From Mizuhopecten yessoensis (lineage: Eukaryota), in the NCBI RefSeq assembly GCF_002113885.1, contig NW_018408902.1:2515490-2579489 (forward strand): 64,000 nucleotides of DNA, given 5' to 3'. Shown one piece after another: positions 8,982 to 61,166 of this stretch (position 1 is the stretch's first letter; each line of letters starts with the position of its first letter). The translations under genes and the position numbers were made by a program. The notes beneath the pieces are model-generated. The model had not been told where the DNA came from, made no database searches, and worked only from the letters and a program-made list of their open reading frames with translations.

Positions 8982-9986
8982 ATGGGGATTCTATCAAAAT
9001 TGAAACACACGGACAACTGTACTCTTCCATCTCTGACCAAATGTAAAGATGGCCACGAATGGTTCTCTAGCTTCGAATTCTACCCAATTGCTGTCGGTAG
9101 TCGAAAAACAGCCTTCGAGGGCATGATGTATGTGCCAAACAATTACTGGAGTCAAACACCTGCTATAATTAAATGTACAAATTACGGACAAGGAACAGAG
9201 GATGATGGCAAAGCGGAAGTTAGTGGAGCGGTCAAGGCGCAAGAATTTGCCGAAGGGTTCTCGAAAAGATTCCCACAGTTTTCTATCAAATTTCTGCGCC
9301 CTCTAGCGGCTGTTATGGACACCGTATCAGTGTTTAACGGTATTTTTCGTTTCCTGAAAGGTTACGACAAAGTTCTATCAGAGGGAGAATGTGTGTTGCT
9401 GGAAGAGAAACTGGAAGGTGATTTTGTCTCCTTCATATACAAAAATGGTGTAATCACATCAAACTGTGAGCCTATCCTTCAGGCGTTCTGCCATTACACC
9501 TACTCTGCTAGTAACGAGGAGCTGGTTATGTCTGGACTACAAGGAGTAAGAAATGGCCACTCGTACACCTTGTCCACTCCCTGTGTTCACTCGCGTGCGC
9601 GACAATACGGCAACACAGACGCCGGTGAAGGAGGCATCTCCACATTTTTCTCGCACCATCAGTGTAATGCATACTGCAGCGAGTTGCCCAAGTTTTCACC
9701 TACGGACCTATCTGCGTCGTCAAGTATTTCGTATGAAAAGCCGTATTCATTCGAGGACACGTTTCCGGTTCAGTACTCGAGCGGGCGATCAGGATGTGAT
9801 AGCCCGGAATTTTCTTACACTGAGCGCAGTATGTTAGTGACGGCTGAGATACACCCTCCCGCGTATGAAGGCGTTGACTCCCAGCCGCCGCCTCCGTACG
9901 ATTTCCAAAACAAGGCTTGTCATGGAAAATCAAATAATGCTGGATCATCAAATCATTTCTCCTCACCGGATGTTCGGACATATTGA
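8982..9986 (+). CDS. Alpha-kinase-domain protein 1 (predicted pseudokinase, 334 aa), PPxY tail
   Basis: Motifs PIAVGSRKTAF, AIIK, LLEEKLEGDF, LQAFCHYTY, MSGLQGV, LSTPCVHS, YGNTDAG, FFSHHQCNAYC match the alpha-kinase order. Acceptor TTTTCAG ends at 8980. Tail contains PPAY and PPPY. AATAAA at 10044. Confidence 0.93.
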   Translation: MGILSKLKHTDNCTLPSLTKCKDGHEWFSSFEFYPIAVGSRKTAFEGMMYVPNNYWSQTPAIIKCTNYGQGTEDDGKAEVSGAVKAQEFAEGFSKRFPQFSIKFLRPLAAVMDTVSVFNGIFRFLKGYDKVLSEGECVLLEEKLEGDFVSFIYKNGVITSNCEPILQAFCHYTYSASNEELVMSGLQGVRNGHSYTLSTPCVHSRARQYGNTDAGEGGISTFFSHHQCNAYCSELPKFSPTDLSASSSISYEKPYSFEDTFPVQYSSGRSGCDSPEFSYTERSMLVTAEIHPPAYEGVDSQPPPPYDFQNKACHGKSNNAGSSNHFSSPDVRTY

Positions 9987-11777
9987 CCTTTCACCTTAGT
10001 GATTGTTAATTACAATATGTTCAAATAACAACAATGATTGGCCAATAAAGCTAATTCCTCGGATGATGGTATGGTAGCGACATTGCTTGCCCTAAAATAT
10101 GTCTCCTTCGGCGGTGATAAGACAGTGTAGTTGCTAATCATAGGAACATGTCTCTCTGATGCTGGCAGTTTGATGTCCTCGTTTATTTTGTCAGTGATGG
10201 GTCTGCTGATAGTCCTATGAAACTAATTGCCTCTACCAGAAATTCGGTGTAGGACATGGATACCAAATACACTGCCTTTGATAATTTATCAAATTATAAA
10301 AAAAATAAATGAATATTTATAATCATATATTTTAGTCCAGGCTGTTTATGAAATATTGGAAAAATATACCGAACCTTAAACATAGTATTATTTATTGCGA
10401 TTCCGGATTTCATGAGCGTTTTCATTTCGGTACTATGTTCATTATGTAGAAATACGTTTATATACAGTTTCTGGAGAAATAGCAGTTATCTGAACAACAA
10501 TATATTTCGCCTCCTTGAAGGTTATGCATTGCTGTACTATTCATCATAAGCAGATCTTCGAAACTGAGGATGAATAATTTAATTTCTTATTTTTTGTGTG
10601 TATATGTCACATCCTTATATTGTAGAAATTATTAATCAGACAATTCGTTTCATATCTAAGTCAGTTCATAAAATTTCCCTCATAGTGTTAGTTTATGAAT
10701 CGATTACAAGGACCAAGTTTTCATCAGATTCTTATAAACGTTAAATAATGTTTGTTTTCTTTTATATTTACAAAATGGTAAAAATATATCTGATCAAATA
10801 TTATTTCAGATAGGAGGGAGTAGAGCTATGCTTTGCTATATATTATGTATTAATTGGTAAAGTTTGGATATGTATCCTTACTTTGACGCTCACTCGGCTG
10901 TGATTATGTTACCTATGTAAGATATCTCTGACCTAAGGAAGTCATGCGTGCCGTGTACGGCTTAGGGTTACGTTAAATCTTAGATTTAGTAGAGTGAACC
11001 CTTTCTCTTAAGTCCAATTTGATATATTTCGATCTATTTAATGTGATATCAATTTGTATTTACACAATCATTATTCTTTTTAATTACATATACCTATTAT
11101 TCTTATCTTAGAACATGCTTTCCTATTTTAATGTGATACATTGTACATAACACATTTATTTACATTGTTTGAAATTATAAATATATATATTTATCCTTGC
11201 TAGTTTTATTTGCACCCATAAACAGAACTTTTGTCAAAATATATAAAAGAATAACTTTATTTTTTAACAAATTCTTTTATATTTTTTTTGTCCAGCTTAA
11301 CGATCAATCGAAACCTGCTCTTATTAGTCAGCCAAAATATCATACATAATATTTATAATTTATTCGAAATCCAATCATATCGATTTAATGTTTAAATAAA
11401 ATTGTCTTTGGTTATCTTGCGTTTGTTTGTTTTGACTTTCTAAAATGAAAATATCCAATCACTGATAGGTTACCTAGCTGATGACAAAGTTAATTAAAGG
11501 GTAAAATAAAAAATTAAAAAAACCCATATCACATTTATCATCCTTTATCTACTTGTAATACATATATACAGCACGGTCAATCTGATACGGTCGAAGTGTG
11601 AGTTATGGAAAGGAGACAATATATATTAAACGATATATTTTGAAACATAAGATTTCACTGATATCAGACTATGACGATGTTGTTTTTTAAATTTACGATG
11701 ATATGGAGATACCGAAGAACAAGGAAATATACCCCGAACCGCCAGCCCTACCTCAACCCACCCGCGATCCTCCCGGG

Positions 11778-12068
11778 ATTACGCTCACCTACGCTCTCTG
11801 CACACCTGGGATATTTCATAGAAAAATCGAAGCCTGGTCTCGGGTAAAAACACCTGACCAATCGCCAGGCTGTCCTTTGAAGATTACAAAGGGGTGACAT
11901 CCGACTTCAAAGCCAGTCAATTTTTACCGTTATGCGACTGCGATATTTTTTTAATGTACATCAAAGAATCAAACTTGTCTTATTGTCTCATCAACAAGGT
12001 GGCACACACTTAGCCTTCAATTTTGCTTTGACATATTCCAGGGGTGCAGAGAGCGTACTGAGCGTAAT
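11778..12068. mobile_element. MITE-like element with about 37-bp terminal inverted repeats
   Basis: ATTACGCTCACCTACGCTCTCTGCACACCTGGGATAT (11778-11814) is the near reverse complement of 12033-12068. Confidence 0.7.
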
Positions 12069-12882
12069 TATCGAAAATGACCTCACCCTTATTTCTTAAC
12101 ATTTTCTTCGGGTTGGTAAGTATGGAATATGAAAAGCTTCTTGTTACACAACCAATAAGTGTTTCTTTGTGACGTTTCGATTACTAGTACGGTATGTACT
12201 CTGTCACCTTCATCAGATCTTTTCATAATCTACCTCACCCCTATCCCCCAGCCCCACCCCTTCCGATGATTTATCGTGCATCGATATTGTGAATTTATCT
12301 GAATTCGAGAACTATGACTGTACTTGCATGAATTAGGCACTGCTGTATATGTCAATATATACATGATTACGTAATACTCTTATTACAAAATGAAATGTAT
12401 TGCGAAAAACTGCCAATTTCTGTAAGTTTTCAGTGTCTGAAATCACAGACTATATGAACCCGATACTTAAACGAGCCATATGTGTTGAATTAATGTTATA
12501 GACTTTTCTTTCCTAAGTGGCTTCCAATGTTATCTAACTTCAGTCAATGGGATTGTTTTCATATTTTGTTCCATTAAAGGGTAAATATGGCCTATTTCAA
12601 ATAAAACAAATCCCTTTTTTTATCAGCTGGGATTATAAAAAGAGGACAGGAAAAGGTTTTATTTTCACACGTAGATATGGCTAGACTATAAGTCAAAATT
12701 GAAAGTAAATAGCATGTAGAGAAACTACATTGTTATAAGTAAGTCTTATATATGTAGAGGAAACGAGGTACTGCGCTTTTTATGACAGAAGTTCCTATAC
12801 AGAAGAGGCAAGATTACCATGTCGATGGGGTTATTGTTCTCGAGTTTTCGAAAAGTTTAACTGTACTAAATGATAAAATATT

Positions 12883-12958
12883 AATAATAATAATAATAAT
12901 AATATACAACATTTATGTAGCGCCCTATATAATTTGTAAAATTACTCTAAAGCGCTAT
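12883..12958 (-). mobile_element. 3' tail of an L2/CR1-type LINE or partner SINE ending in (ATT)n
   Basis: Minus strand reads AGCGCTTTAGAG...ATATAGGGCGCTACATAAATGTTGTATATTATTATT. A related copy lies at 23722-23790. Confidence 0.6.
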
Positions 12959-17940: not shown

Positions 17941-18972
17941 TTAAGACCAGAATCTGTTCCATCTGGATCTGTTTGTAAACCGGCAAATGTATTTGGTCTT
18001 TAATTCTATAACTTTATTGATAAAACTTCGAACTCATTCTGCCTTGTTTCCTGGTCTAATACCTTCTTAACATTAATAAATATACTCTCTGTGAACCGGC
18101 ATCAAAACACGTTGTATTCTAGTTCAATCCTTATTACCAGACAGGAAAGTTAAGAGTTGACCAGTCATTTTCAACTCTACCGGATATTATTCAATTATAG
18201 CATTTAGCTGAGGTCGATACCTTTTCTCGGGTCGATAAATCCAGGTATTGACCGAAGTTAAAGGCTACATTTGTTTTATTATTTTACAAAACAGTAATGT
18301 AAGCAATCTGAAAAAAAACCCACAACAGAAAAGCTTCGGAAGTGAGACGGTGCATTGTTTGGAGACACGTCCTAATTATATTTTTAGAAACACCCAGTCC
18401 TTCAACAAAAATCACGCGCTCCAAGTCAATAACATATGATGTTATTATTTTTTCATATTATTACTGACACGTGATTGTGGCCAGGAGTGCATCACGTGTC
18501 CACCGATAAAAACCGATATTGACATGGATCGCGTGATTTTGTTGAAGGACTGGGTATTTCTAAAAAAAAGAATTATGACGTGTCTCCAAACAATGCACCG
18601 TCCCGCTTTCGAGTCTGTTTTTTTTCTTTTTCAGATTGCTTACATTACTGTTTTGAAATTAATAAAACAATTGTAGCCTTTAACTTCGGTCGATACCTGG
18701 ATTTATCAATCCGAGAAACTGCCTCCTCTGTTAATATATCTTTTCTCGGGTTAATAAATCCAGGTATCGACCTCAGCCAAAGGCTATAATTGAATATTAG
18801 TGAAAGTTGAAAATGATCAGAACTTGATATAGATTAACAGAAAGAGAGTATTAGACTGGGAAACAAAGACGGTTTACTTAGTCCGGAGTTTAATCAATGA
18901 TGTAAAGTAATTAAAGACCAAATAATTTGGCCGGTTTACACAAACGTCCGGATTGGGCAGAATCTGGTTTAA
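17941..18972. mobile_element. About 1-kb palindromic fold-back element with TTAA at both ends
   Basis: 17941-18030 pairs with 18885-18972, 18164-18257 pairs with 18684-18817, and symmetry continues to a centre near 18484. Confidence 0.8.
18258..18683. mobile_element. Kolobok/T2-type MITE (TTAA|AGG...CCT|TTAA) with long TIRs
   Basis: TTAA at 18258-18261 and 18680-18683, AGGCTACA...TGTAGCCT termini, arms over 150 bp. Confidence 0.75.
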
Positions 18973-20224
18973 ATAAAATCCTAAGTACATCAAACTGTGT
19001 TAAATTTTAAGCTTTGATACATTTTAAAATACCCAAGATTACACGAAAGCGCTTCTAGATTTCTATCAAGTGTCATTTGACACGTCTAGGGGGGAGTTGC
19101 GCTTTAGACGAAATCAGTATATCTGTATTGACCATGCATGCTCATAATAAAAAATAAATAAAAAATGAAATATTCATTCATTTGTATTCCTACAGCTTCG
19201 GGAGGTATCGCTCCCCTCCCTCCTTAGCCCGACCGTTGCTCCGCCCCTGGACAATGAACCTTCCTAAACGCCAGGTCGCCACACTATATGAAAACCCTTA
19301 TCTTGAAATTTTGAGTTATTAAGTCGAAATCTCGAGTTACTATCTTGAAATTTCGAGTTATAAACACGAAAAAACGAAATTATTGTTTATTCTCATTGGC
19401 GCTACTGCTCTTCCGTATGGTTATAATTCTAAGAAACGGATAATTATATTAATATTATCAACAGATACGCAAGATAATTATCCAGCCGTGTGCCAAAACA
19501 CTGAAAAATATTTTGTTTGATTTCAAATAATGGAACAATATATTAAATATATCATTGATATAGTTTAGTTTAAAGGTAAATTAAAAAATGATTCTACGTT
19601 TCGTAATTTCCGTTTTTTGGTGTGTAAAAACAAGACATCCTATGACCACGTCGATCGTATAACCATCTGTTTGAAATTGAGGGCACAGGAGGCCCTTCTA
19701 CTTCAGTCTCTTTACATGGTATAAACCTAGAATACAACCAACAGAAACGGCTAAATAATAATTAAAGCGTGACGATCTTTCCATTCTTGATCGTAACATC
19801 CGTGCTTCCCCAACATAAGGTGTTTATGTGTCGCAGTTGACTCATTTTTCGAGAGCTTGATCCTAATATAATGATTTCCTTAATATTTGTCGACTTTACA
19901 CGGAGAGACTGACAACTAATGGTTTTGATTTATGCAGGTTGATGAAGATTGTGGTTAAGATTTATGGTCACTATCACGATATCATTGTACAATTTTGTTA
20001 AAGAAGATATTTGGATCACGCTCCTTAATATGCTTCGATATTTCGTTGTTAACACCGCTGTTCTCGTTTGAAGGTCAGCCATTACTTTGATTTGACCAAG
20101 GATTGCGTACTTGTGTCATCGATGAAACAGAAGACGCTTATCCTTCCCGGTCTTGGTCTGGTCTTATTCTCCTTTTATACTTTTCAAGAGCCTTTACGTC
20201 AATCTTTTATCGTTTTTGTGACTG

Positions 20225-20733
20225 AACTAGAACACTGACAGGTCAGTAAGGGCCCCGTCATGTGGCAATATATCTCCAAAAATCATCAAGAATCAATCTG
20301 CCCATGTAGCTGAGCTTGACGTTTTACATTTGGACTTAAAAAAGTATTATGATGTGATTCTTGCTTCCTTCCATCTCCTTTAACCTTGACCCCTGACCCA
20401 ATGACCTTGACCTTAGGCAGTTGACTCCTTGTTCTGATCAACAAAATTTTCATCAGTGAAAAGATGCAAAATTTGACCTGGACCTTTGAACCTAATAACT
20501 TTGACCTTTGACCTTGACTTTTTACCTCAATGTGTATTTTTGTTAACTGAGCATATTGACTAAGTTTCATGTTCATCGGTCAATAAATACCAAAGTTATC
20601 AGCAAGGAACAAAAAAGGAACAGACAGACAGACAGACAGACAGATGGACGAACGGACACACAGACATACAGACACACAGACATACAGATTGATTACTATA
20701 GGGCACCCGTATCTCCGATACGGGGCCGTAATT
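20225..20733 (+). mobile_element. Helentron-associated (HINE/DINE-1-like) non-autonomous element
   Basis: AACTAG start, TGACCTT-rich core, (ACAG/ACGG)n microsatellite at 20620-20687, 3' hairpin CCCGTATC-tcc-GATACGGG at 20706-20724. Confidence 0.7.
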
Positions 20734-21155
20734 ACAGTTGTGTTGACACCTCGGTGTTCTCTTGCTGTTTTATCTCCAGATTTCACAAGTCACATACGTT
20801 TTTTGACTTGAGTATAATATATACAAATAATAATCTGTAAACGCACATATTTATCGGTGTTTTATTTCAGCGCTTGTCTCAATTTTAATCTTGCGTATAA
20901 TTATGACTGCGCTTATTGAAGTTCTTGTATTTGTTTGTCTATTGCAAAAAATCTTCAATGCGCTAATTTTTAGAAATCAAAGTATACACTAACATATGAG
21001 TCCGCTAAAGTAAGGACTTTTACAGTATTGTAGCCTTGTTTGTTATATGTGTGCTGGGGCGATGTACATCACAACAAACTAGAAATGCCACACAAGTCTT
21101 ATTTTTGTTTCTAAACAATGACTTCTCCTTTCAAACAGAGTTCATCGCTGCAGTA

Positions 21156-22013
21156 ATGGACAACTCTACGTATCCTTACCACACAGAGAATCTACAAGGC
21201 CACACAAGTTTTGAGTTCTATCCTTTCCACCAGGACCAGAAACACACGTGCTACAAAGGAATGCACTTTTCTACTAATCGTATCGATCAAACTAGAGTCC
21301 TTGTCAGAACTTCTACTGGGGAATCTTTCAGTAACAATGACGTGAAAGATATGCTTCTTGCAACCAAATATGCAGAAACGTATTTGGAGGGATTCTTCAA
21401 ACAATATTACATCAAAGAATTCCTGTGCATGTGTCGAATGACACATTCGCCCGTGTCGTTCGGGCAGCCGGTTGTTACAAGGTTGGCCTCAACGGCTCGG
21501 TGTCTGAATAGGTTCTTCAAGGTCATCAGAGGACACCACAAAATACTGAAGAAAGACGAATGGGTTTTCATTGAGAGACGCTTGTTAGGAGAATACGTTT
21601 CTTTTGTTGACGAAAAAGGACACAGAACGAAGGAGACAGACGGAAAAGAACAGGGAAGAACCTACTGTGACTTTGAAAGATTATTGTCAGCATTTTGTCA
21701 TTACACACTGGTGTCAAGTGGCCAGACACTTGTGGTTTGTGGTCTTACCGGTGTCCATAACGGACAACACACCCGCCTGTCCATTCCGTGCGTACACTCT
21801 GTCGACCAGACATTTGGTGCTGAAGATCAAGGAACACGGGGAATAGAAAACTTTGTCAAGAACCATAAATGTAACGCATTGTGCAAACACTTGTCGCTCC
21901 TCACAGACAATCGTAAACATAAACCACGGTACAATCAGTCTGATAAAGCAACAGGTGGGATGGAACGCGTTTTTGGTTCTGCTCAAGTAGCGGTTTATTC
22001 AGGACAGGCATAA
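21156..22013 (+). CDS. Alpha-kinase-domain protein 2 (predicted pseudokinase, 285 aa), no PPxY tail
   Basis: Acceptor ...TTTCAAACAG ends at 21138 and the first ATG is at 21156 (the track's TTG start is intronic). Motifs FIERRLLGEY, LSAFCHYT, VVCGLTGV, LSIPCVHS, FGAEDQG, HKCNALC. Candidate upstream donor AG|GTAAGT at 17403. Confidence 0.9.
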   Translation: MDNSTYPYHTENLQGHTSFEFYPFHQDQKHTCYKGMHFSTNRIDQTRVLVRTSTGESFSNNDVKDMLLATKYAETYLEGFFKQYYIKEFLCMCRMTHSPVSFGQPVVTRLASTARCLNRFFKVIRGHHKILKKDEWVFIERRLLGEYVSFVDEKGHRTKETDGKEQGRTYCDFERLLSAFCHYTLVSSGQTLVVCGLTGVHNGQHTRLSIPCVHSVDQTFGAEDQGTRGIENFVKNHKCNALCKHLSLLTDNRKHKPRYNQSDKATGGMERVFGSAQVAVYSGQA

Positions 22014-22545
22014 CTGAATATCGACGTGATTTCTGGATTTGTTTTTGTTTTAAAGGAACTTACTGCAGTATAAATGTGGAGTTATCTAGAGGTTTGATAG
22101 TGATAGATTGTGATATATTGATTATGACTTCTCACTCCTTGGGCAGAGATATCCACACTATCGGACAGGAAATTTTTGTTCTGGCTTAACCCGGGTTGAA
22201 AACCAGCCTGAAGCGTCAGCGTGTGCTCAACCGAAAGTTGTAACACATTTGTGTATTGCACTGAATTAATAGGCCAAGTAAATTTATCACATATATTTAT
22301 GTTGTATCTCTGTCACTTACAAGGTAAATGCTTTTTACAAATGACTAGTTGTAATAATACTGCCATTGTCTATATCATGACAAATAAAATCGTCCTCGAT
22401 TTGTATTGCTCACCTGTGGGTAATTGTTTTTATTCATTTGGATTATAGAAATATTGGGAAAAAAAGAAAGTTTCATTTTCAGGGAGGAGAACCCTGACGG
22501 TGTAACCCACGGCTGATGTAGTCTCGTTTGACTTATTTTTAAGCA

Positions 22546-23097
22546 TACGGCAAGCCAGCTTAGCATTTATTCAAGGAGCAATGTCGATATTTTATCTAAT
22601 TTTATCTATCTTATTTAATCAGATATCTTATATGGTATTATCGGTATCTTGTATAATATACAAGATATCTTATATACCATATGATATATCTCATATAGAA
22701 CTAAATGAGATATCTTAATTAAGAATATAAGATATCTTTTATAATATATAAGGTATCTCATATACTATATAAGATATGTTATATAGTGACGAGATTTCAC
22801 ATGATATCATTTATCTTACAGATTATACATTGTATGATATATCTTGCACAGAAAATAAATCGAGATATCTTATCTTATCAGCATATGAGATGTCTTATAA
22901 AAAACTCACAATTTGTTTATAAGATATCTATATAAGATATTTAATTTGTATATGAGAAATATATAAGATATATATATATTGCATAAGATATCTCGTATAT
23001 CATATAATATATCTTATATACTTTATAAGATATATGATATAGTTTTATGAAATTCGGGATTGACATTGCTCGTTGAATGTTAAGTTGGCTCGCCGTA
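22546..23097. mobile_element. MITE, family 'TA|YGGCAAGCCA', with AAGATATCTTAT-rich interior
   Basis: TACGGCAAGCCAGCTTAGCATT..TTCAAGGAGCAATGTC pairs with GACATTGCTCGTTGAATGTTAAGTTGGCTCGCCGTA. TA at both ends. Confidence 0.8.
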
Positions 23098-23790: not shown

Positions 23791-26324
23791 ACACATGAAT
23801 AATAATATTTCTACAGTGAGATTTATAGATATAGTAGATAAAAAAGACATACAAATCAGCATTATACATAAAGTTACAGGACAATTATCTCAATATGCAT
23901 TTAATTGAATATGTAAAGAGTGGCGTGTTCATGACACCCGTGCAAAAAGCGTAAAATGGAGACGCAAAGAGGTGGGTCCTTATGTTGATATTCCGTATGG
24001 ACGACATTGCCTTAAACACTCAGCCTCCGTCGTCATTGAGGATTATGTCTGGAGTCTAATTTCATTAGAAGTGTTCATTTCCAAAACTTAGAGGTAGTTT
24101 TATTATAAACCACACATTAAATCAAAATGGCTTGCAAATATCCTGTTTAATCGATTTTAAAAATGCCACATACTCAGCTCCCTCATGAATATATCTAGTG
24201 CTATTACTTTTACCAATTTTTTAATGTATGTTACGATGTATGTACATGTAGTTTCAACTCTTTTTTTATTGTCAATATATTGCAGAAATATAAATAATAT
24301 ACATAATACAAGGCTTCGAAAACAAGTACAAATTTATTAAATTGTCTATTTAAATAAAATGTATCATAAAAAGCTAATTTTTTTTTGTTTTGTTTGTTTA
24401 TTCTTTTTAAGGAATGTTAAGATTCATTTAATTTTCAATTTTGATAAAATGTCGTACAACGCAATTTTTCCCATTACGTATATCAAATAATAAAAGTTTG
24501 TCAAAAATAATCCAAATACGTGATACATAAAAAGATACCCTCCCTCGATATATGATAACCATGTATCTACATTATGATAACCTATCAAACTCGACGACAA
24601 ACACGACGACATCAATTTTCCGAAAGGTTAAAGGTCAATCTTCTAAGAAGGAACTTGTTTGCATCTACACTACTTCATAGCCGGCCGTACTTCACACGTA
24701 TTATTTGTTACTCCAGAGTAAACTTTATGTGTTGAGTGTGTCCATGTTTGATTATATTATCTTTTTTTTTAACTTCCGGGACAACGTCGTTTTATCCTCT
24801 CAAGACAAAAATTGTTAATAAATTAATAACAATTCATAACCTGTTAACGAAAATTTCCAGGCCGCCATTTGTACGAATTGCTCGAGTTACTTTGAAAAGG
24901 GAAACTTCGTTTACAATAGTAATACTCTAGTCGTATAGTGTGCATTTGGTATATTTAATAAACACTTAAAACTAAAATATTCTCCTTATATATTTTATTA
25001 ACATTTAATATCAAAGCATATTCCTTATATAATTAATTAACCCTTAATACAAAAACATAAAAACATAAAAAGTAAACCCAAAGTACTAAACCATATATCC
25101 CCACTGTTTTTATCCTGAGTATTGAAATCTACCCTTTCCTGCGACATTTACGCTTAAGAACTCGTATTCCATATACTGTTTCATTTACCATAAATTTTAA
25201 AATATACACTCCATCTTTGAAGCAAATAAAAAATACGCCTAAGCATTATTTTAAAGTATATGTTAGGGTGTTGGGCTGATGTTCATCAACCTGCGTCACA
25301 GTCCGTGGTTATTAGGAAATACTAACCGAGTTTTTCTTTATTTTTATCTTTACTCAAGTCGATTGTAAATAAAAGAGCTATATATGGAAATTAATAATTG
25401 AAGTTGGATGACCCGTGAAGAAACAGACCTTTAAATACAACAACTGACTCATACATTGACGTAAATACATGCACGTACATGATAATAACTATGTTATATG
25501 AATATATTTTTTATACTTATGATTATGAAATAAGCGACATTTTGTTTTACAATAAGTGAAATTTTAATCAATTGTAATGAATTATAAAAATCAAGTTATC
25601 GCAATTAAAATGTTAAAACTGTCCACGTTAAGTTAACATATTTTATTTTTTTTTCTTTTTTTTTATATAAAATAATCCTAATTGATGTCATTCAGTCATC
25701 AAACTGTTGATGCGAAGTTGATTTGATTTAACAGACTTGACTACAGGTAACTTCCAAAAACTACCGCAATATTACTCTCGCTCTACATGAAGCTTAAACT
25801 ACCTGTAATGCAGGTAAAACGTATAAACTTGCTACAGTGTTTAACTACTCATCTGGATCCACTACGGGGTCTAGGTTTAAACGGGAGAAATTACTGCGTA
25901 ATAGATTGATTGACGTATTTAAGTATATTTCGAAATAGCGGTGGTTTCCCGGTGCTATTTATAGATAATATGATTGGTATATAAATCAAGTCGGTACCCG
26001 ATCATCGTTTAAACGACAAAAACAAGTGACCCAACCAAAGCACCCACGTAACGAAGAAATACTAGATATATATTTTCATTTCTCGATTCAAAGGTAAGCT
26101 GACGTATCTTTCAGAATATTGTTATAATACTGTTCAAAAGAAAATGATTGACGTATTTAAGTATATTTAGAAATAGCGAGGGCTACAGAAAAAAGTGGGA
26201 GAAAGGAGAACAAACCGTTCAAAAGAAAATGACTGAAAATTTGCTCTCTGGCAGAGTATATAAACGCGTATGTAAATAATGTATACTTGTCACTAAATTT
26301 GATTTAAACCTAACTTGTCTACTT

Positions 26325-27382
26325 GCTTACATATCTTGTTGACGTTAACCATGCTATATATCTAGTTAAAGTTAACCATACTACAAATCTTGTTGAAGTT
26401 AACCATGCTATATCTCTATTTAAAGTTAACCATGCTACATATCTTGTTGAAACTAACCATGCTATATATCTAGTTGAAGTTAACCATTCTACATATCTAG
26501 TTGAAACTAACCATGCTACATATCTTGTTGAAGTTAACCATGCTACATATCTAGTTGAAACTAACCATGCTATATATCTAGTTAAAGTTAACCATGCTAC
26601 ATATCTAGTTGAAACTAACCATGCTACATATCTAGTTGAAACTAACCATGCTATATATCTATTTAAAGTTAACCATGCTACGTATCTAGTTGAAAATAAC
26701 CATGCTATATATCTAGATAAAGTTAACCATACTACATATCTTGTTGAAACTAACCATGCTATATACCTATTTAAAGTTAACCATGCTGCATATCTAGTTG
26801 AAAATAACCATTCTACATATCTTGTTGAAGTTATCCATGCTACATATCTAGTTAAAGTTATCCATGCTATATATCTTGTTGAACTTAACCATACTACATA
26901 TCTTGTTGAAGTTATCCATGCTACATATCTAGTTGAAACCAACCATGCTACATATCTAGATGAAACTAACCATGCTATATATCTAGTTAAAGTTAACCAT
27001 ACTACATATATTGTTGAAGTTAACCATACTATATATCTAGTTGAAGTTAACCATGCTACATATCTTGTTGAAGTTAACCATACTATATATCTTGTTGACG
27101 TTAACCATGCTATATATCTTGTTGAAGTTAACCATACTACATATCTTGTTGAAGTTAACCATACTATATATCTTGTTGATGTTGTAACCATGCTACATAT
27201 CTAGTTAAAGTTAGCCATGCTACATATCTAGTTGAAGTTAACCATACTACATATCTTGGTGAAACTAATCATGATTTATGTCTAGCTGAAACTAATCATG
27301 ATTTATGTCTAGCTGAAACTAATCATGATTTATGTCTAGCTGAAACTAATCATGATATATGTCTAGCTGAAACTAACCATGC
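26325..27382. repeat. 27-bp minisatellite, about 39 copies (TACATATCTAGTTGAAGTTAACCATGC)
   Basis: Direct tandem repetition. The unit is a multiple of 3, which gives the two repetitive ORFs of about 290 aa. Confidence 0.97.
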
Positions 27383-28324: not shown

Positions 28325-29296
28325 ATGACGAATTTCATTAAACTGAGTAACGAGACCTATTCCTCTTCGGCATCATCAGATGAAAGATTCGCAAACTTCA
28401 GTTTTTCACCAAAAGCCACTGGAGGGACCATGGTCGTTTTTAAAGGCCTCATGTCATTGGTCAATCCGATTGGAGCGGATCCAATCAAGGCTGCTGTTAA
28501 GTTCTATCGCAACAACAACGATAAAACAGCAGCTGGTATTTGGAACCGGAAAGCCTCGGCCTATATACAAAACGCTGTTATTGGGGAGGCCTTTGCAACA
28601 AATTTCAAAAACATCACATTCCCAAAATGTTTTATGACTACGATTGAAACGGTGTCAACGTTAAATAGACAATTCAAGATGACGGATGGTCATCACCGGA
28701 AGCTGAGGAAAAACGAACTTGCTTTATTCGAAAGTTATATTGATGGCAGTTTTCAATCATTCGTTGATGACGATGGCACTATTCAAAAAGGCTGTCCAGA
28801 ACAATTGGAGGCGTTTTGTCATTTTGCCTACCATGAATCACGCGGTAAAATGATAGTCACTGGCGTAAAGGGCGTCCGCGCAAACGGCAAGTTCCAGCTT
28901 ACTGCTCCGAAAATTCACTCGATGGGAGGCAACTTCGGCCCGGATGACAGCGGCCAGGAGGCCGTTTTTAAGTTCTTTCTTGGACATAAATGTAAAAGAA
29001 GTTGTAAAACCAGCTGGCGCCATCCTCTCTCCTCCCCATCCGCTTTCGACCTGGGGCGAATAACCAGCCTGTTGTCAATCAATCAGAATCCAAGATCAGC
29101 AACACCGCCTCCGTCATATAAATCAGTGATTCAACTCGTTTGTGGAAACCAGTGCCACCGTTTCCTGATGGGAGATAATTCTGTTGTTGTGTTGCCAGAA
29201 CATTATCGTCAACATTTACAGACCGGAAGAGAGTTAGATATAGCGGGCAATACGATAGGTGTGTCGGACGCCGTTAGTTCCCTGCAGTGTGGGTAA
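28325..29296 (+). CDS. Alpha-kinase-domain protein 3 (predicted pseudokinase, 323 aa), PPSY motif
   Basis: Acceptor TTTCTTTTCCAG ends at 28302, ATG at 28325. Motifs AAVK, LFESYIDGSF, LEAFCHFAY, IVTGVKGV, LTAPKIHS, FGPDDSG, FFLGHKCKRSC. Tail TPPPSYKSV. Confidence 0.92.
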   Translation: MTNFIKLSNETYSSSASSDERFANFSFSPKATGGTMVVFKGLMSLVNPIGADPIKAAVKFYRNNNDKTAAGIWNRKASAYIQNAVIGEAFATNFKNITFPKCFMTTIETVSTLNRQFKMTDGHHRKLRKNELALFESYIDGSFQSFVDDDGTIQKGCPEQLEAFCHFAYHESRGKMIVTGVKGVRANGKFQLTAPKIHSMGGNFGPDDSGQEAVFKFFLGHKCKRSCKTSWRHPLSSPSAFDLGRITSLLSINQNPRSATPPPSYKSVIQLVCGNQCHRFLMGDNSVVVLPEHYRQHLQTGRELDIAGNTIGVSDAVSSLQCG

Positions 29297-32271: not shown

Positions 32272-33981
32272 TCAAGGACAGTCAGGAGCACTTTGGAATA
32301 TGTCAGTTTCATTGACCAGTATATACATTACAAGAGCGCCAATTGTAGAACCGACTTGAGTCACCACGCCACACCAAAACAGAGCTTTTCTACCTTCTCT
32401 TCTGAAGAGCGTTGCTATGGATACCTTTGAGAACGTCATTAATAGAACCAATAAAATCCATGACATCACCTTTGAATAAAAATAAAAATAAAATCATTAA
32501 CAAAGTAAAATGAGTAAAGGGATAATGTAGAAAAAGAACAATGTTGAGCTTATCCATTTTGACTTATATTTGCATATCTTTAAAGTGGCTTTAATTGTCA
32601 AATATTGAAAAGCTATTAATTCAAAACAATATTTGGTAAATTTGAAGCATGTTCGAAAACGAAAAGTTATATTGAAATAACCACCGTGTGTGAAAGACCT
32701 ATATTATCATTGGATGTATTTATTATGTATCTTTCGTACCATAATCACAGGACCCGCGACACTTTCGTACAGCAAAGGGGTTGGACTTTGTACAGCCATC
32801 AGCATAATGAATGCTGCCAAAGATGTACCCAACAAGACGAGAATACCGATAACGAGGCTCGAGGACACTGGAACTAAGAATACTCCAAAACACGCGACAG
32901 GATTGGCAATACTGGAGAGGGTGGCGCTAAGATGGTAAGCATTGGCACCATACGGTAGACACGAGTATGTCTGTATGGAAGGGAGCACCCCATTACCTAG
33001 AGCGTTGATCCAGCCGATCAGAATGATAAGGTACACATAAGTCCTTCGTCTAATTTCCGTCTGTTGGGGAGCTGGTTGGCTGACACTGCCAGAATAAATG
33101 TCAATCGTTCGAACTTTTTTGTTGTTAGGCAATAACGTTTGACTGGAGCCATTCACCATGGACGGATTGTGAACTGTGTCTGAAAATGTAGTGTAGTTAC
33201 GGCAAAAATCACTGTTTAAGTTAAAACTATTTATGAAGTCCTCGTCACTGGGTTCTTCTTTTACCTTTACGTGTTGTCTCTTACAGTACGGTAGGTAATT
33301 CAGAAGTGTGAACGCTAGACCACTCATCACTACCATACCGAAGAGGGAATAAAAGAAATGCTCCACTGGAAAGGAAGGATCTTGATATTCTGGTTGAATT
33401 TCATTATGTGAAATATTTGTAGTCGTGTCTAAGACCGATATATTCTGACACGTCATCTTCCCCACGCCTTGTCCTAGTGCTACTAGACTGGGGATCAGGC
33501 CACTCAGACCCTCTCCGATATACAGGCCAGACATATACTGGGTTTTGAACATGGACATAAAGGGAAGAAACAGGACAGACGATGTGCAGTCAACACTGGC
33601 AAGGAAAAACTGCAGAACCAATAAAGCCAAACTGTGATTCGTTCCCAGTACATACGAGGTATTCTTCCAGAAAAACACAAGGAGAAGGCAAGCGGCTGCC
33701 CCTACAACCAGAATAACATAAACTAAAGTCTTCTCGGGGATAGAATATTTGCAGCACAAAAACCAAAATGTCAGCATAACAGGTCCAATGTTCGCTAGTT
33801 GGGTAATCACTGTTAAATATGACGGGAGTTTCCAGCCCTCCGGTAAGTGAGGGACCATGATAGGCAGTTCTACCCAGAGGCCATTGACGGCTAACCATGA
33901 TGCAGTACCAAACATGGCGACAAGGATATAAACGAAGATGTTTACTTCGCGAAATCGATTGCAATTTCTTCTGTCAGTCAT
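32272..33981 (-). CDS. SLC52A: Riboflavin transporter, SLC52A (RFVT/GPR172) family; coding exons 33981-32740 and 32469-32272, 479 aa
   Basis: Signatures FGTASWLAVNGLWVELP, LPEGWKLPSYL, ANIGP, VDCTSSVLFLPFM, GEGLSGLIPS, NGVLPSIQTYSCLPYG, ANP. Phase-0 GT donor at 32739 and AG acceptor at 32471-32470 join to VMSWILL...TQVGSTIGA. Upstream acceptor at 34037-34036. Confidence 0.96.
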
Positions 33982-41285: not shown

Positions 41286-41290
<5 letters not shown>

Positions 41291-45914: not shown

Positions 45915-46808
45915 ATGTGTAGTCAAATAGGAGCTTTGTTTCAAAATGAAACTCTGAATTCGGAATCCGGGCCGTGTGCATTCTTTCACTTCCGGCCATC
46001 CACTTCTGGTCAGAGACTAGTAGTTTATAAGGGTGCCACAACAGATTATCTGGCGGGAGATCACGTGGTTAAAGTTTTCAAGCAGAAAACAGAAAATGAC
46101 CCAGACTCTTCATATCAGCGCAGTTTGTGTTACATTGCAAGCAAAGAAACGGTCGAGAAATACTTACAGAAATATGGAAGAAAGACAATAACTTTTCTTG
46201 AACTTCGTTCTGCAGAAATGGACCAGATATCAATGTTTACCCGACACATCCGTTCTAGCGACAAACGTCATAAACGCCGTCTGCGCGAAGATGATGTGGT
46301 AGTATTTGAACAAGATCTCGGGAAAAACTTCGAAACTTTCATCGAACGGGACGGGACGGTGAACGCAACCTGTTGTGGTGAACTACAGGAGTTCGTCCAT
46401 TTCGTTTACAACGAGTCGAAAGGGCAAGAAATTGTGACGGGCCTGAAGGGAGGGACATTTAATCAAGGTAAAAAGTACAAACTTACATCACCGTCTATGA
46501 ATTCTGTTGGAAAGAAATATGGACCAGACGATTGCGGGGAAAAGGCTATTCTAAACTTTTTCATTTCACACGTATGTACAGACATCTGTTCGCAATGGCC
46601 AAAACCGTCAGTTCAGCACCCATTTCCTTGTTCAGAAACATTAGATAAAACTCACAATAAAACAACGGTTACCAGAGAAACCGAGATATTAAGAGATGAC
46701 ATGCCGCCTTTGTATGATTCACAATGGCGGCTTGATTTCGAGAAATCGGTGCCGATTTCCTCATATTTACAACCATCAGCACCCCCACCTTATGACTTTA
46801 TTACCTGA
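45915..46808 (+). CDS. Alpha-kinase-domain protein 4 (predicted pseudokinase, 297 aa), PPLY + PSAPPPY tail
   Basis: Poly-T + ACAG acceptor ends at 45900, ATG at 45915, candidate donor GTAAGT at 45612. Motifs HVVK, VFEQDLGKNF, LQEFVHFVY, IVTGLKG, LTSPSMNS, YGPDDCG, FFISHVCTDIC. Confidence 0.92.
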   Translation: MCSQIGALFQNETLNSESGPCAFFHFRPSTSGQRLVVYKGATTDYLAGDHVVKVFKQKTENDPDSSYQRSLCYIASKETVEKYLQKYGRKTITFLELRSAEMDQISMFTRHIRSSDKRHKRRLREDDVVVFEQDLGKNFETFIERDGTVNATCCGELQEFVHFVYNESKGQEIVTGLKGGTFNQGKKYKLTSPSMNSVGKKYGPDDCGEKAILNFFISHVCTDICSQWPKPSVQHPFPCSETLDKTHNKTTVTRETEILRDDMPPLYDSQWRLDFEKSVPISSYLQPSAPPPYDFIT

Positions 46809-49514: not shown

Positions 49515-49638
49515 GTAACTGGAAAACTCACCGTGGTTTGGCAGGTGAAAAAATAGCTTTCCACTTCCGATTTGGGATTCAAACCTTGGCCGTATTGGTG
49601 AGAGACGAGTACGCTATCAGCTGCGCCATCCGAACACC
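49515..49638 (-). mobile_element. tRNA-derived SINE head with V-domain-like segment
   Basis: Minus strand has A-box TGGCGCAGCTGATAGCG, B-box GGTTTGAATCCC, then GGTGAGTTTTCCAGTTACTTCC. Confidence 0.55.
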
Positions 49639-58700: not shown

Positions 58701-59444
58701 AATATGTGCATTTTTTGTAAAAACTCATCCAGAAACAATAACACATATATTATGGGATTGTGAAAAAGGTATATAATTTGATAGAAAATATAAGAATTAC
58801 TATTATTGCAACAAGTTTTGGTCTTCGATTTAATAAAAAAAGAATTTATCTTTGGCAAGCAAATTAATAAATATACAAAGTTCAACTTGAATAACTTGAT
58901 ATTGCTCACGGTAAAACAATACACATATAAATCAAAATGCCTTGAAATAGAACTCAATCTGAATGGTCTAAAAAATCATATCAAATTCGAATTAAAAGCT
59001 TACTAAATTCTAAAATCCAAAAGTAACATTAAAAATAAAATACAGATTAACACACAGATACATCACTGGTTGCACATTTAAAATTTGAAATAAATTAAAT
59101 TTAACATCTTTCTGACCTAGGTTTCCCCTGTCCTTGCTTTGTCCCACATGTCTTGTCCTTTGTCTTTTGTGTGCATTTGATTTTTGTCTGTATACCTTAT
59201 GTCACGAATACCATTTATTTATATATTAATTTGTGTGGGTATATAACTGTAAGTGTAGGTGTGTCCAAATGTGAATTATTTTTTGTCTATGTATATAGGT
59301 ACATGCTTAACTATTTATTCATAGTGAATTAGTTAGCAACAACTATTAAGCTTTAAGAGCTTAACCAACAATCATATACCATATGTGTTGTGTCATGTCA
59401 TGTAAAAAAATAAATGAAAATGAATAAAAAATAAATTTAAAAAA
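55761..59444 (+). mobile_element. 5'-truncated, decayed L1/Tx1-clade LINE (RT, zf-RVT, 3'UTR, A-rich tail)
   Basis: RT motifs LIDFEKAFDSVSW, GCRQGDPISSYIFILCAE, QFADDT, SGLKMNFSKT; C-terminal PIWFN, RINHRILTTN, CIFC. Many stops and frameshifts. 8-bp TSD AGTATGTG at 55753-55760 and 59445-59452. Confidence 0.92.
56688..58020 (+). mobile_element. Satellite-bearing Helitron/Helentron-type element with about 146-bp tandem array, inserted in the LINE
   Basis: Starts AACAAGAGGCCCAATGGGCC..CGCTCACCTG. TTTGACCCCTGTGACC recurs about every 146 bp from 56985 to 57970 (7-8 units). The unit resembles bivalve Cg170/BIV160-type satellites (from memory). Confidence 0.75.
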
Positions 59445-60173
59445 AGTATGTGAATATATATTTATTGATATCACTATATGAATATATCTATAAGTGGATA
59501 TGAATATATATGTACTACTGTAAAAGTGGAAATTTGGCTGTGTCAAAATGCTTGCAATTTCGCTGTTGAGTACATCAGCGCGAATATATCCAAACGTCTG
59601 AGGAAGCCCAAGAAGACAGAAAGGCTGAGCGGTCAGTCTATTTAGATTCGAAACCATTACCAACACACAAATTTACACCGCGATCAGTTAAAAGTGTCAA
59701 ACACAACGCGAAAATTTTCATATGCGAGAATTTCCACTTTTGCCATGGTATAAATATCACTGTGTGAATTTTCTACATCTGTATGTGAATATAGTCTCAA
59801 TTCTGTGTCCTATTAACTCTCTAACTTTGGCGCAAGTGCTACCGTCGGTCGACGGTTCTAGTTTCATCAGAAATGTTTTCATAGCGTATAAGTCAACCAA
59901 GAAATGATATTATGGATTAATGGATTTACTTTTCTAGATCTTATTTCGGAGGAAATGAAACACATCCATTTGAAAACAATCAGTATGGGCATAAGAGCAT
60001 GCAAAGGAAATATTGCTGATATAAAGAACAATTATTCAATCTTTGCAAAAATGTAAATATATAAATAATATATATATTTCTTCCGTTTGAAAATCAGCAT
60101 CCCTTTGCATATTTTTATTGATACCTATTTAAAGGATTTTTTTTTTTATCTTTTCAGACTTAATCATTCATAG

Positions 60174-61166
60174 ATGGGTAGCAAACTTGGCACCGTGTTC
60201 GAGAATGAAACTTTCAACTCCAAAAATGGTCCATGTGCTGTATTTGATATATTGCCATTTAGTTCCGGTCAGAGACTAGTAGCTTTCAGAGGTATTATAA
60301 CACAGGCACTAGCAGAAGGTCACGTGATTAAAGTTTTCAGAGAGAAAACCGCAAATGACTGGCACTCATCGTATCGACGCTGTTTACACTACATTGAAAG
60401 TAAAGAAATCGTCCAAATGTACTTGCGGAAAAACAGAAGAAAAATGATAACTTTTCTAGATCTTTTTTCGGCGGAAATGGACCAGATATCACTGTTTTCC
60501 CGACGCATCCGTTCTAGCGACAAACGTCATAAACGCCGTCTGCGCGATGATGATGTGGTAGTATTCGAAAAATATCTCGGGAAAAACTTCGAAACTTTCA
60601 TCGAACGCGACGGAACGGTGAACACAAACTGTCGTGGTAAACTGCAGGAGTTCGTCCATTTCGTTTACAACGAGTCGAAAGGGCAAGAAATTGTGACGGG
60701 ACTGAAGGGAGTGGCATTAAATCAAGGTAAAAAGTTCAAACTTACATCACCGTCCATGAATTCTGTGGGGATGAAATATGGACCAGACGATATCGGGGAG
60801 AGGGCGATATTGAACTTCTTTGCAACTCATGAATGTACGAACCTTTGTTCCCAGTGGCCAAAACCAGTGATTCAAAACCCATTCCTTGTATCAGTTGATC
60901 CGGACATCCCTTCGAGACTTAGCGATTTTATGGAATCGTTGTCGTCACAAATAGACGCGCAGCAGTTTTACCTGAGTACTCCGCCATATTCCAGTGGCGT
61001 CAGCACAGCCGTGGTGCATGGTGGGACATGTACAGATAAAAGGACTCAAATAAACGACACACCGCCCCCGTATCAGTCACAATGGAGACTTGATTTCGAG
61101 GACTGTACAACAGATTATATACCGCCAGAACCATCAGCGCCCCCTCTTTATGATTTAACTACCTGA
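60174..61166 (+). CDS. Alpha-kinase-domain protein 5 (predicted pseudokinase, 330 aa), PPPY + PSAPPLY tail; closest paralog of gene 4
   Basis: Acceptor TTTTCAG ends at 60157. Motifs HVIK, VFEKYLGKNF, LQEFVHFVY, IVTGLKGV, LTSPSMNS, YGPDDIG, FFATHECTNLC. Confidence 0.93.
   Translation: MGSKLGTVFENETFNSKNGPCAVFDILPFSSGQRLVAFRGIITQALAEGHVIKVFREKTANDWHSSYRRCLHYIESKEIVQMYLRKNRRKMITFLDLFSAEMDQISLFSRRIRSSDKRHKRRLRDDDVVVFEKYLGKNFETFIERDGTVNTNCRGKLQEFVHFVYNESKGQEIVTGLKGVALNQGKKFKLTSPSMNSVGMKYGPDDIGERAILNFFATHECTNLCSQWPKPVIQNPFLVSVDPDIPSRLSDFMESLSSQIDAQQFYLSTPPYSSGVSTAVVHGGTCTDKRTQINDTPPPYQSQWRLDFEDCTTDYIPPEPSAPPLYDLTT

What the first reader, a model, noticed from the sequence alone, without database searches (positions are those of the whole stretch)
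8982..61166. Tandem cluster of five alpha-PSEUDOkinases: the catalytic Asp is Gly in every copy
Seen in sequence: all five ORFs follow the alpha-kinase motif order, but the DLQG Asp is Gly in each (SGLQG 9534, CGLTG 21741, TGVKG 28862, TGLKG 46440 and 60699). The LTDP Asp is T/I/A/S/S (9576, 21783, 28904, 46488, 60747), and the F-x-K-x-N-S-N loop has become F-x-S/T-F-I/V. Established: these Asps correspond to eEF2K D274/D284, TRPM7 D1765/D1775 and MHCK-A D756/D766, which are required for phosphotransfer. The ORFs are intact and mostly very divergent from each other, yet keep the Zn ligands (FCH/FVH and HxCxxxC) and the G-x-x-D-x-G loop. Inference: catalysis was lost once in a common ancestor, and the dead fold was then amplified and kept under selection for a non-catalytic role. 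I know of no described family of small stand-alone alpha-pseudokinases; automated annotation would probably call them alpha-protein kinase vwkA-like.
Basis: partly seen in the sequence, partly recalled or inferred. Interest (0 to 1): 0.9.

Follow-up and report, generated by a model that had tools for sequence, protein, structure and literature searches.

The report
Scallop cluster of dead alpha-kinase proteins
Five neighbouring Yesso scallop genes encode small proteins that keep the alpha-kinase fold but have lost its catalytic residues, and they belong to a large, undescribed mollusc family whose tails carry motifs that typically recruit ubiquitin ligases and membrane-budding machinery.

Summary
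The window is Mizuhopecten yessoensis scaffold NEDP02005575.1. Five + strand genes, each with one coding exon, all match Pfam Alpha_kinase (E 1e-21 to 1e-28). Each aligns on its own to solved alpha-kinases with Gly opposite the catalytic Asp and T/I/A/S/S opposite the metal-binding Asp. The FxKxNSN residues are also lost in all five, and the metal-binding Gln is lost in c2-c5. The zinc ligands, the hinge Glu and the GxxDxG loop are kept.

The c1 model has pLDDT about 97 over the domain and best matches MHCK-A, eEF2K and TRPM7. The five are not a local novelty. All named relatives that lack the second Asp are molluscs, and a sixth dead copy lies about 37 kb beyond the window.

The second Asp is absent from the whole 41-member clade holding the five copies. 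The first Asp position drifts (G/N/D/K), so "lost once" holds only for the second Asp.

c1 is under strong purifying selection (dN/dS 0.03-0.14), and its ortholog is a polyadenylated mRNA. For c4 against c5, dN/dS is 0.3. No RNA was found for c2.

Tails of the dead class are enriched in PPxY (37/64, 2.7 expected) and P[ST]AP (25/64, 0.5 expected). The likely role is a membrane-linked NEDD4/ESCRT adaptor, which is inferred, not shown.

Two earlier first-reader notes of this scan (s1-519445, s1-519540) had flagged the tail motifs on this same stretch.

The parts
8982..9986 (+). c1: 334-aa gene in one coding exon. It starts MG (possible N-myristoylation). The alpha-kinase-like domain spans about aa 27-238 and the tail is disordered.
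   Evidence: ORF. Pfam Alpha_kinase E 1e-28. AF2 pLDDT is about 97 for residues 11-240. Foldseek top hits are MHCK-A, eEF2K and TRPM7. dN/dS is 0.03-0.14 against three orthologs. A polypyrimidine-AG acceptor ends directly before the ATG.
9534..9536 (+). c1 Gly185 at the catalytic-Asp position (MHCK-A D756, TRPM7 D1765, eEF2K D274).
   Evidence: phmmer alignment to MHCK-A and 4kuj.
9576..9578 (+). c1 Thr199 at the metal-binding / phospho-acceptor Asp position (MHCK-A D766).
9855..9899 (+). c1 tail PY motifs: PPAY (9855-9866) and PPPY (9888-9899).
   Evidence: Motif scan. Both are conserved in the orthologs P0001 and P0002. Tail dN/dS is 0.04-0.09.
21156..22013 (+). c2: 285-aa gene, the most divergent copy. 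It has Gly196 (21741) and Ile210 (21783), Arg at the beta-strand Lys position, a 12-residue insertion, and a basic tail without PPxY.
   Evidence: The RNA runs X23 and X24 gave no reads on the CDS. There is no close ortholog. The nearest relative is P0014 at 41% identity.
28325..29296 (+). c3: 323-aa gene with Gly180 (28862), Ala194 (28904), PPSY at 29108-29119 and a conserved C-terminal ...VSDAVSSLQCG.
   Evidence: The tail is conserved in P0006, from another species, at 61% overall identity.
45915..46808 (+). c4: 297-aa gene with Gly176 (46440), Ser192 (46488), PPLY at 46704-46715, and overlapping PSAP/PPPY at 46773-46793.
   Evidence: dN/dS against c5 is 0.29-0.31.
60174..61166 (+). c5: 330-aa gene that starts MG. 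It has Gly (60699), Ser (60747), PPPY at 61062-61073, and overlapping PSAP/PPLY at 61131-61151.
   Evidence: The NCBI gene model has the same 330-aa product and a gene range that runs upstream beyond the 3-kb flank fetched. An in-frame TAG lies directly before the ATG.

Best explanation
The five genes encode small cytosolic pseudokinases of the alpha-kinase fold. They belong to an old radiation of such proteins that, among the named sequences, is found only in molluscs.

**What is shown**
- The zinc-stabilised fold is kept.
- Most of the phosphotransfer and ATP-site residues are gone: both Asp residues and the Lys and Asn of FxKxNSN in all five, the metal-binding Gln in c2-c5, and the conserved P-loop Arg across the dead class.
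- At least c1 and the c4/c5 pair evolve under purifying selection, in the domain and in the disordered tail.
- Across the family, the tails are strongly enriched in PPxY and P[ST]AP motifs, and many members start with MG.

**What is inferred**
- The dead domain serves as a binding module. It may hold a helical peptide target through the retained GxxDxG substrate loop. It may still hold a nucleotide through the retained beta-strand Lys and hinge Glu.
- The tail recruits NEDD4-type WW-domain ubiquitin ligases through PPxY. In c4 and c5 it may also recruit TSG101/ESCRT-I through PSAP.
- N-myristoylation (c1, c5) places the complex on membranes.
- The proteins would then act as adaptors for ubiquitin-dependent sorting or budding of whatever the dead kinase domain binds, much as ARRDC1 or Ndfip proteins do with other binding domains.
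For: - **Fold and family:** All five match Pfam Alpha_kinase. The AF2 model has pLDDT about 97 over the domain. Foldseek gives E 6e-15 and TM about 0.70 to MHCK-A, followed by eEF2K, TRPM7 and ALPK1.
- **Dead site:** Each copy aligns on its own with a non-acidic residue at both Asp positions. The positions at least 80% conserved in 36 canonical (Asp/Asp) relatives but variable in the dead class are exactly the P-loop Arg, the FxK Lys, the NSN Asn, Asp1, Gln and Asp2. No acidic residue is conserved specifically in the dead class.
- **Selection:** c1 against its orthologs gives dN/dS 0.03-0.14, with the tail at 0.04-0.09. c4 against c5 gives 0.29-0.31. DNA similarity to the c1 orthologs stops exactly at the CDS ends.
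- **Expression:** The ortholog contig L006 ends in poly(A). All five ortholog contigs have an in-frame stop before the ATG. Fourteen small assemblies hold at least 0.84 of the c1 words, twelve of them exactly 0.84, which fits an exon starting at the acceptor.
- **Tails:** Among small dead-class proteins, PPxY occurs in 37/64 (2.7 expected from shuffled tails), against 0/32 canonical ones. P[ST]AP occurs in 25/64 (0.5 expected), against 1/32. Both motifs occur together in 19/64. The motifs are conserved between c4/c5 and P0005, and between c3 and P0006, although synonymous sites are saturated.
- **MG start:** 28/84 of the dead class start with MG.
Against: - No binding, ubiquitination or localisation data exist, so the adaptor role rests on short motifs.
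- c2 has neither PPxY nor MG, and c3 and c4 lack MG, so one mechanism may not fit all five.
- The independent-contrast test of Asp loss against PPxY had too few contrasts to show co-evolution.
- Nucleotide binding is not testable here, and no model coordinates were available to inspect the pocket.
- Expression in M. yessoensis itself is only indirect for c1, was not detected for c2, and was not examined for c3-c5.
- dS is saturated in most comparisons other than c1 against Pecten and c4 against c5.
Confidence: 0.5

Rival explanations
1. They are regulators or decoys of active alpha-kinases. The dead domains would pair with catalytically competent alpha-kinases (eEF2K, TRPM-type or small vwkA-like kinases), or compete for their substrates, and tune their activity as many pseudokinases do. 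On this view the tail motifs only control turnover.
For: The fold and the substrate-loop residues (GxxDxG, hinge Glu) are conserved. Small canonical Asp/Asp alpha-kinases of the same size exist in other invertebrates such as Lingula, Adineta and Convolutriloba.
Against: No active partner lies in the window. No dimer interface was tested. This view does not explain why PPxY and P[ST]AP are enriched across the family, or why the tail of c1 is as constrained as its domain.
Confidence: 0.2
2. They are still enzymes. The domain would keep nucleotide binding and catalyse a different or metal-independent reaction (ATPase, or another transfer) using other residues, for example the Lys that replaces the metal-binding Gln in c3-c5.
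For: The beta-strand Lys (c1 K64) and the hinge Glu (E141) are at least 90% conserved in the clade. Lys replaces Gln in 54% of the clade.
Against: Six ATP-site or catalytic positions are lost together, and the first Asp position drifts among G, N, D, K, S and C, which looks like released constraint. No new conserved acidic residue appears. The PDB titles the D756A and D766A forms of MHCK-A as inactive.
Confidence: 0.12
3. Some copies, chiefly c2, are decaying or silent duplicates with no present function.
For: The two RNA-seq runs gave no reads on the c2 CDS, and the only contigs there have depth 2-6, no higher than over the neighbouring non-coding DNA. c2 has no close ortholog in the protein collection, and its nearest relative is 41% identical. 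It lacks MG and PPxY.
Against: The 285-codon ORF is intact in a 65% A+T genome, and all fold-critical residues are kept. An orthologous lineage (P0014, P0013) exists in other species' assemblies. Only about 19% of each of two runs, of unknown tissue, was read.
Confidence: 0.15

Closest known systems
Canonical alpha-kinases (Dictyostelium MHCK-A, TRPM7/ChaK, eEF2K, Entamoeba EhAK1 4kuj)
   Same: The Pfam family and 3D fold are the same, as are the zinc module (His, His, Cys, Cys), the hinge Glu and the N/D substrate loop.
   Different: Both catalytic-site Asp residues and the FxKxNSN residues are missing in all five, the metal-binding Gln in c2-c5, and the conserved P-loop Arg across the dead class. 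There are no accessory domains, and the tail carries PPxY/PSAP.
[quoted passage not shown]
   Same: It is an alpha-kinase domain with lost ATP-site residues and a scaffolding rather than catalytic role.
   Different: ALPK3 is a large vertebrate muscle protein that keeps the predicted catalytic Asp (D1774) and differs at four other conserved residues. The scallop proteins are about 300 aa with no other Pfam domain, lack both Asp residues, and form a large multi-gene family in molluscs.
Dictyostelium VwkA, the name given by automatic annotation
   Same: It has an alpha-kinase domain. NCBI names the relatives 'alpha-protein kinase vwkA-like'.
   Different: Pfam finds no von Willebrand A domain in any of the five, and the catalytic residues are absent. 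The name is a transfer from the domain only.
PPxY/PSAP adaptors of NEDD4 ligases and ESCRT (ARRDC1, Ndfip1/2, retroviral Gag and filovirus VP40 late domains); comparison from my own knowledge
   Same: A disordered tail carries PPxY, and c4/c5 have an overlapping PSAPPxY. Many members have an N-terminal MG.
   Different: The folded module is a dead alpha-kinase domain, not an arrestin fold, a membrane protein or a viral matrix protein. Binding to WW or UEV domains is untested.

Membership tests
Alpha-kinase family (Pfam PF02816), structural membership | Sequence match to the family profile above the curated cut-off | tested here: met
   Scores are 78-101 bits against a cut-off of 21.3 for all five.
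Alpha-kinase family (Pfam PF02816), structural membership | Alpha-kinase 3D fold with the C-lobe zinc module (His, His, Cys, Cys) | tested here: met
   The c1 model has pLDDT about 97 in the domain. Foldseek's 44 best hits are all alpha-kinases. H171, H226, C228 and C232 are invariant.
Catalytically competent alpha-kinase | Catalytic Asp of D-[LI]-Q-G (MHCK-A D756, TRPM7 D1765, eEF2K D274) | tested here: not met
   It is Gly in all five.
Catalytically competent alpha-kinase | Metal-binding / phosphorylated Asp of T-D-P (MHCK-A D766, TRPM7 D1775, eEF2K D284) | tested here: not met
   It is T, I, A, S and S in c1-c5, and it is absent from all 41 members of the clade.
Catalytically competent alpha-kinase | Metal-binding Gln of DLQG, and Lys/Asn of F-x-K-x-N-S-N | tested here: not met
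   Gln is kept only in c1 (T in c2, K in c3-c5). Lys becomes S or T, and the Asn residues are lost, in all five. These positions are 89-100% conserved in the canonical class.
Catalytically competent alpha-kinase | ATP-binding Lys in the N-lobe beta strand (MHCK-A K645, TRPM7 K1646) | tested here: inconclusive
   A Lys in the 'VVK' strand is present in c1, c3, c4 and c5, with Arg in c2. The N-lobe was not aligned directly to a solved structure.
Catalytically competent alpha-kinase | Phosphotransfer activity | not testable with these tools
   This needs a recombinant protein assay.
VwkA-type kinase | N-terminal von Willebrand factor A domain joined to the alpha-kinase domain | tested here: not met
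   Alpha_kinase is the only Pfam family above its cut-off in all five. The ORFs are complete at about 300 aa, with upstream stops in the transcripts.
NEDD4/ESCRT adaptor (functional class, not a homology family) | Conserved PPxY and/or P[ST]AP in a disordered region | tested here: met
   c1, c3, c4 and c5 have PPxY, and c4 and c5 have PSAPPxY, but c2 has none. The motifs are conserved in orthologs. The tail has pLDDT below 50. Enrichment is family-wide.
NEDD4/ESCRT adaptor (functional class, not a homology family) | Physical binding to WW domains or the TSG101 UEV domain | not testable with these tools
   This needs pull-down or ITC experiments.

The most novel reading that the evidence does not exclude
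Molluscs have turned a small myristoylated alpha-kinase into a large family of catalytically dead 'late-domain' adaptors. The dead kinase fold would bind a target or a nucleotide, and the PSAP/PPxY tail would engage ESCRT-I and NEDD4 ligases to sort that target into vesicles or for degradation. This would be a cellular counterpart of ARRDC1 or viral Gag built on a kinase fold.
Probability: 0.25. Interest if true: 0.8.

Novelty: new variant of a known kind. Interest (0 to 1): 0.62.

Why it matters
Pseudokinases of the classical kinase fold are well studied, but in the alpha-kinase family only vertebrate ALPK3 has been described as one (PMC9698156).

This is a whole multi-gene family. In the profile search, 84 of the 122 full-domain cluster representatives lack the second Asp. 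Every source-named member looked up is a mollusc: bivalves, a gastropod and a cephalopod.

The family shows what the alpha-kinase fold keeps when catalysis is gone. The zinc module, the hinge Glu and the substrate loop remain. The first Asp position then drifts.

The link to PPxY/PSAP tails and MG starts gives a concrete, testable non-catalytic function.

There is also a practical point. These genes are annotated as 'alpha-protein kinase vwkA-like', and such annotation has already been read as kinase activity in bivalve studies (the Mytilus 'VwkA' shell-field gene in PMC9283884). I did not check whether that gene is a dead member.

Tried and rejected
- **Read laying on c2 (window 18000-23000):** The two raw RNA runs gave no reads on the CDS, so c2 expression stays open.
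- **The search for homologous proteins with the 37-sequence alignment:** It returned only 8 proteins because of the word index, which made it useless as a taxonomic survey. The search with c2 found only c2 itself.
- **Independent-pairs test of Asp2 loss against PPxY:** Only 5-7 contrasts were available, so it had no power.
- **AU test on the full 122-row tree:** It did not finish in three runs and was replaced by a 48-row subset. The test of the five window copies as one clade was left unfinished.
- **YN00 estimates:** They failed, and NG86 dS is saturated, for c2, c3 and c4/c5 against the foreign orthologs.
- **Secreted glycoprotein reading of the conserved N-x-T:** I rejected it, because I see no hydrophobic signal-peptide-like N-terminus in the translations (no predictor was run), and many members begin with MG.
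- **Terminal exon of a larger protein:** I rejected this for c1, because the ortholog transcripts have upstream in-frame stops, and for c5, because a TAG lies just before the ATG.
- **Literature searches:** Searches for alpha-kinase plus pseudokinase, vwkA plus mollusc, the oyster kinome, and alpha-kinase domain plus PPxY found no description of this family.


Full report
**What is there**

The window is A+T-rich animal DNA (G+C 31-39%). It matches Mizuhopecten yessoensis assembly GCA_002113885.2, scaffold NEDP02005575.1.

Five long ORFs lie on the + strand:

| Copy | Coordinates | Protein |
|---|---|---|
| c1 | 8982-9986 | 334 aa |
| c2 | 21156-22013 (first Met) | 285 aa |
| c3 | 28325-29296 | 323 aa |
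| c4 | 45915-46808 | 297 aa |
| c5 | 60174-61166 | 330 aa |

All five match Pfam Alpha_kinase (PF02816) with E 1e-21 to 1e-28, and no other family passes its cut-off. A tblastn search of the whole window finds exactly these five and no fragments.

Each ATG is preceded within 25 nt by a polypyrimidine tract and AG. For c5, a TAG stop lies directly before the ATG. The NCBI gene range for c5 also runs upstream beyond the 3-kb flank that I fetched. The likely layout is therefore a non-coding 5' exon plus one coding exon.

**Check of the observation**

I aligned each copy on its own against the sequences of solved structures.
- In all five, Gly stands opposite the Asp of DIQG/DLQG in MHCK-A, TRPM7, eEF2K and the Entamoeba kinase 4kuj.
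- T, I, A, S and S stand opposite the Asp of (L/Y)TDP.
- A profile of the set gives the same register.
- I recomputed the Gly codons of c1-c4 and the second-Asp codons of c1 and c2, and they are exact. The other four I took as given.
- The FxKxNSN stretch has become F/Y-x-S/T-F-I/V.
- The zinc ligands and the G-x-x-D-x-G loop are invariant.
- One correction: the metal-binding Gln is kept only in c1. It is Thr in c2 and Lys in c3-c5.

An AlphaFold2 model of c1, built on a 37-sequence alignment, has pLDDT about 97 from residue 11 to 240. The tail is disordered. Foldseek's 44 best PDB hits are all alpha-kinases, led by MHCK-A (E 6e-15, TM about 0.70 on the target). Two of those entries, 3lmi (D766A) and 4zs4 (D756A), are titled as inactive forms. 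That supports the view that losing either Asp abolishes activity.

**The wider family**

A profile search of 1.84 billion cluster representatives gave 4350 hits. I analysed the best 150.
- At the first Asp column the counts are D 65, G 57 and N 30.
- At the second Asp column they are D 52, T 35, N 28 and S 11, plus others.
- The zinc ligands, the hinge Glu and the loop Asp are nearly invariant.

I compared 36 canonical (Asp/Asp) rows with the rows that lack the second Asp. The positions at least 80% conserved in the canonical rows but variable in the others are exactly the P-loop Arg, the FxK Lys, the NSN Asn, Asp1, Gln (Lys in 54% of the clade) and Asp2. No acidic residue is conserved only in the dead class. 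The beta-strand Lys and the hinge Glu remain.

The named members of the dead class that I looked up are all molluscs: Pecten, Pinctada, Mya, Saccostrea, Ostrea, Nucella and Octopus. The named canonical small relatives come from Lingula, Adineta and Convolutriloba. Most relatives, however, are unnamed assembly contigs.

A sixth dead gene, P0039 (GLKG / TIPT), lies on the same strand of the same scaffold, about 37 kb past the window's end. It is at least 90% identical across four scallop genera.

**History**

The tree is a quick IQ-TREE run on 122 rows, with the two Asp columns left out.
- All five copies fall in a well-supported clade (SH-aLRT 99) of 41 rows. None of those rows has the second Asp.
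- Six rows in that clade keep the first Asp. The rest have G, N or K.
- c1, c2 and c3-c5 sit in three different subclades, each together with genes from other bivalves. Only c4/c5 is a young pair.
- On the full tree, the second-Asp state changes 7 times and the first-Asp state (D or not) changes 16 times.
- On a 48-row subset, AU tests reject the non-Asp rows (p 7e-9) and the Gly rows (p 4e-4) as single clades. I named these groups after seeing the tree.

My reading is that the second Asp was lost once, early. The first Asp position then lost its constraint and drifted. The shared Gly in the five copies is therefore not good evidence of one event. The tandem cluster is old rather than a recent amplification.

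**Are the genes alive?**

*c1*
- Its orthologs are 90%, 83% and 80% identical in protein but only 78-82% identical in DNA.
- DNA similarity stops exactly at the CDS ends.
- dN/dS is 0.03-0.14, and the tail is as constrained as the domain.
- dS is about 0.8-1.0 against Pecten but saturated against the others.
- One ortholog contig ends in poly(A), and all five ortholog contigs have in-frame stops before the ATG. The 334-aa protein is therefore complete and expressed in that species.
- In the source species, 14 small assemblies hold at least 0.84 of the c1 words, and twelve of them hold exactly 0.84. That fits a last exon starting at the acceptor, but it is only indirect evidence.

*c4 and c5*
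- dN/dS between the two is 0.29-0.31.

*All four lineages*
- Relatives of c1 (P0002), c2 (P0014), c3 (P0006) and c4/c5 (P0005) come from runs with closely numbered accessions, so possibly from one foreign species.
- For c2, c3 and c4/c5 against these relatives, dN/dS is about 0.14-0.21 where NG86 could compute it, with saturated dS. For c3, dS was not computable. The tail motifs are conserved.

*c2*
- It is the weak case. The two raw RNA runs gave no reads on its CDS, and only contigs of depth 2-6 lie there.
- It has no close ortholog.
- It has neither MG nor PPxY.

**How it may work**

The tails point to a function. The counts below are for small proteins (400 aa or fewer) with tails of at least 10 residues:

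| Motif | Dead class (n = 64) | Expected from shuffled tails | Canonical class (n = 32) |
|---|---|---|---|
| PPxY | 37 | 2.7 | 0 |
| P[ST]AP | 25 | 0.5 | 1 |
| Both | 19 | - | 0 |

- c1, c3, c4 and c5 carry PPxY. c4 and c5 end in an overlapping PSAPPxY.
- c1 and c5 start with MG, as do 28/84 of the dead class and 20/36 of the canonical class.

From general knowledge, PPxY binds the WW domains of NEDD4-type ligases, P[ST]AP binds TSG101, and MG- starts are often myristoylated. My best explanation is therefore a membrane-linked adaptor. The dead kinase fold would bind a target, or a nucleotide. The tail would bring in the ubiquitin and ESCRT machinery. This step is inference, and no tool here can test binding.

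The rival explanations are regulation of active alpha-kinases, a residual non-kinase enzymatic activity, and decay of c2.

**Comparison with what is known**

ALPK3 is described as the first alpha-family pseudokinase. It is a large vertebrate muscle protein that keeps the predicted catalytic Asp.

The oyster kinome paper lists only nine atypical kinases and says nothing about dead alpha-kinases. No paper in the library combines 'alpha-kinase domain' with PPxY.

The 'vwkA-like' label is a transfer based on the domain alone, because no vWA domain is present.

I class this as a new variant of a known kind. The family is real, conserved and large. Its pseudokinase status is well supported by sequence, and its function is open.

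**Limits**
- There were no model coordinates, so I could not inspect the pocket directly.
- Expression in M. yessoensis is not shown directly for any copy.
- The taxonomic survey rests on the minority of sequences that carry names.
- The trees are quick searches, and some rows have long branches.

Noticed in passing
window 32707-33981 (-): An intronless 424-aa ORF matches the Pfam SLC52 riboflavin transporter family at E 1e-132. It sits between c3 and c4 on the opposite strand.
   Followed up: partly
L013 10001-10990 (same scaffold, about 37 kb beyond the window's end): This is a sixth dead alpha-kinase-like gene (P0039, 329 aa, GLKG / TIPT, starts MGQQ) on the same strand. It is at least 90% identical in Mizuhopecten, Pecten, Ylistrum and Argopecten, so the cluster extends past the window.
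   Followed up: partly
window 9015-9023 (c1 N12-C13-T14), and the same place in c2-c5: An N-terminal N-x-T motif, usually followed by [LFY]-x-S, is invariant in the five copies. An N-x-[ST] sequon is found in the first 40 residues of 62/84 dead-class relatives. The model predicts a beta strand there (residues 12-14, pLDDT about 97). Its role is unexplained, and it is unlikely to be a glycosylation site because I see no signal-peptide-like N-terminus.
   Followed up: partly
L003 10926-11024 (Pecten maximus ortholog of c1): The reading frame changes near codons 302-310, and the conserved tail continues in another frame. The annotated 317-aa protein therefore lacks the second PPxY. This could be an assembly error or a real frameshift.
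   Followed up: no
window 18167-18834 and 20171-20838: These are repeat-like stretches. Many RNA reads and high-depth contigs fit them only in part, so they are probably transposable-element copies.
   Followed up: no
window 26319-27204: Long ORFs of about 290 aa lie on both strands over a low-complexity, His-rich repeat. Pfam gives only weak matches below or barely at the cut-offs.
   Followed up: no
window 2782-3939 (-): Overlapping ORFs of 177-257 aa on the minus strand; the two scanned (257 and 177 aa) have no Pfam match.
   Followed up: no
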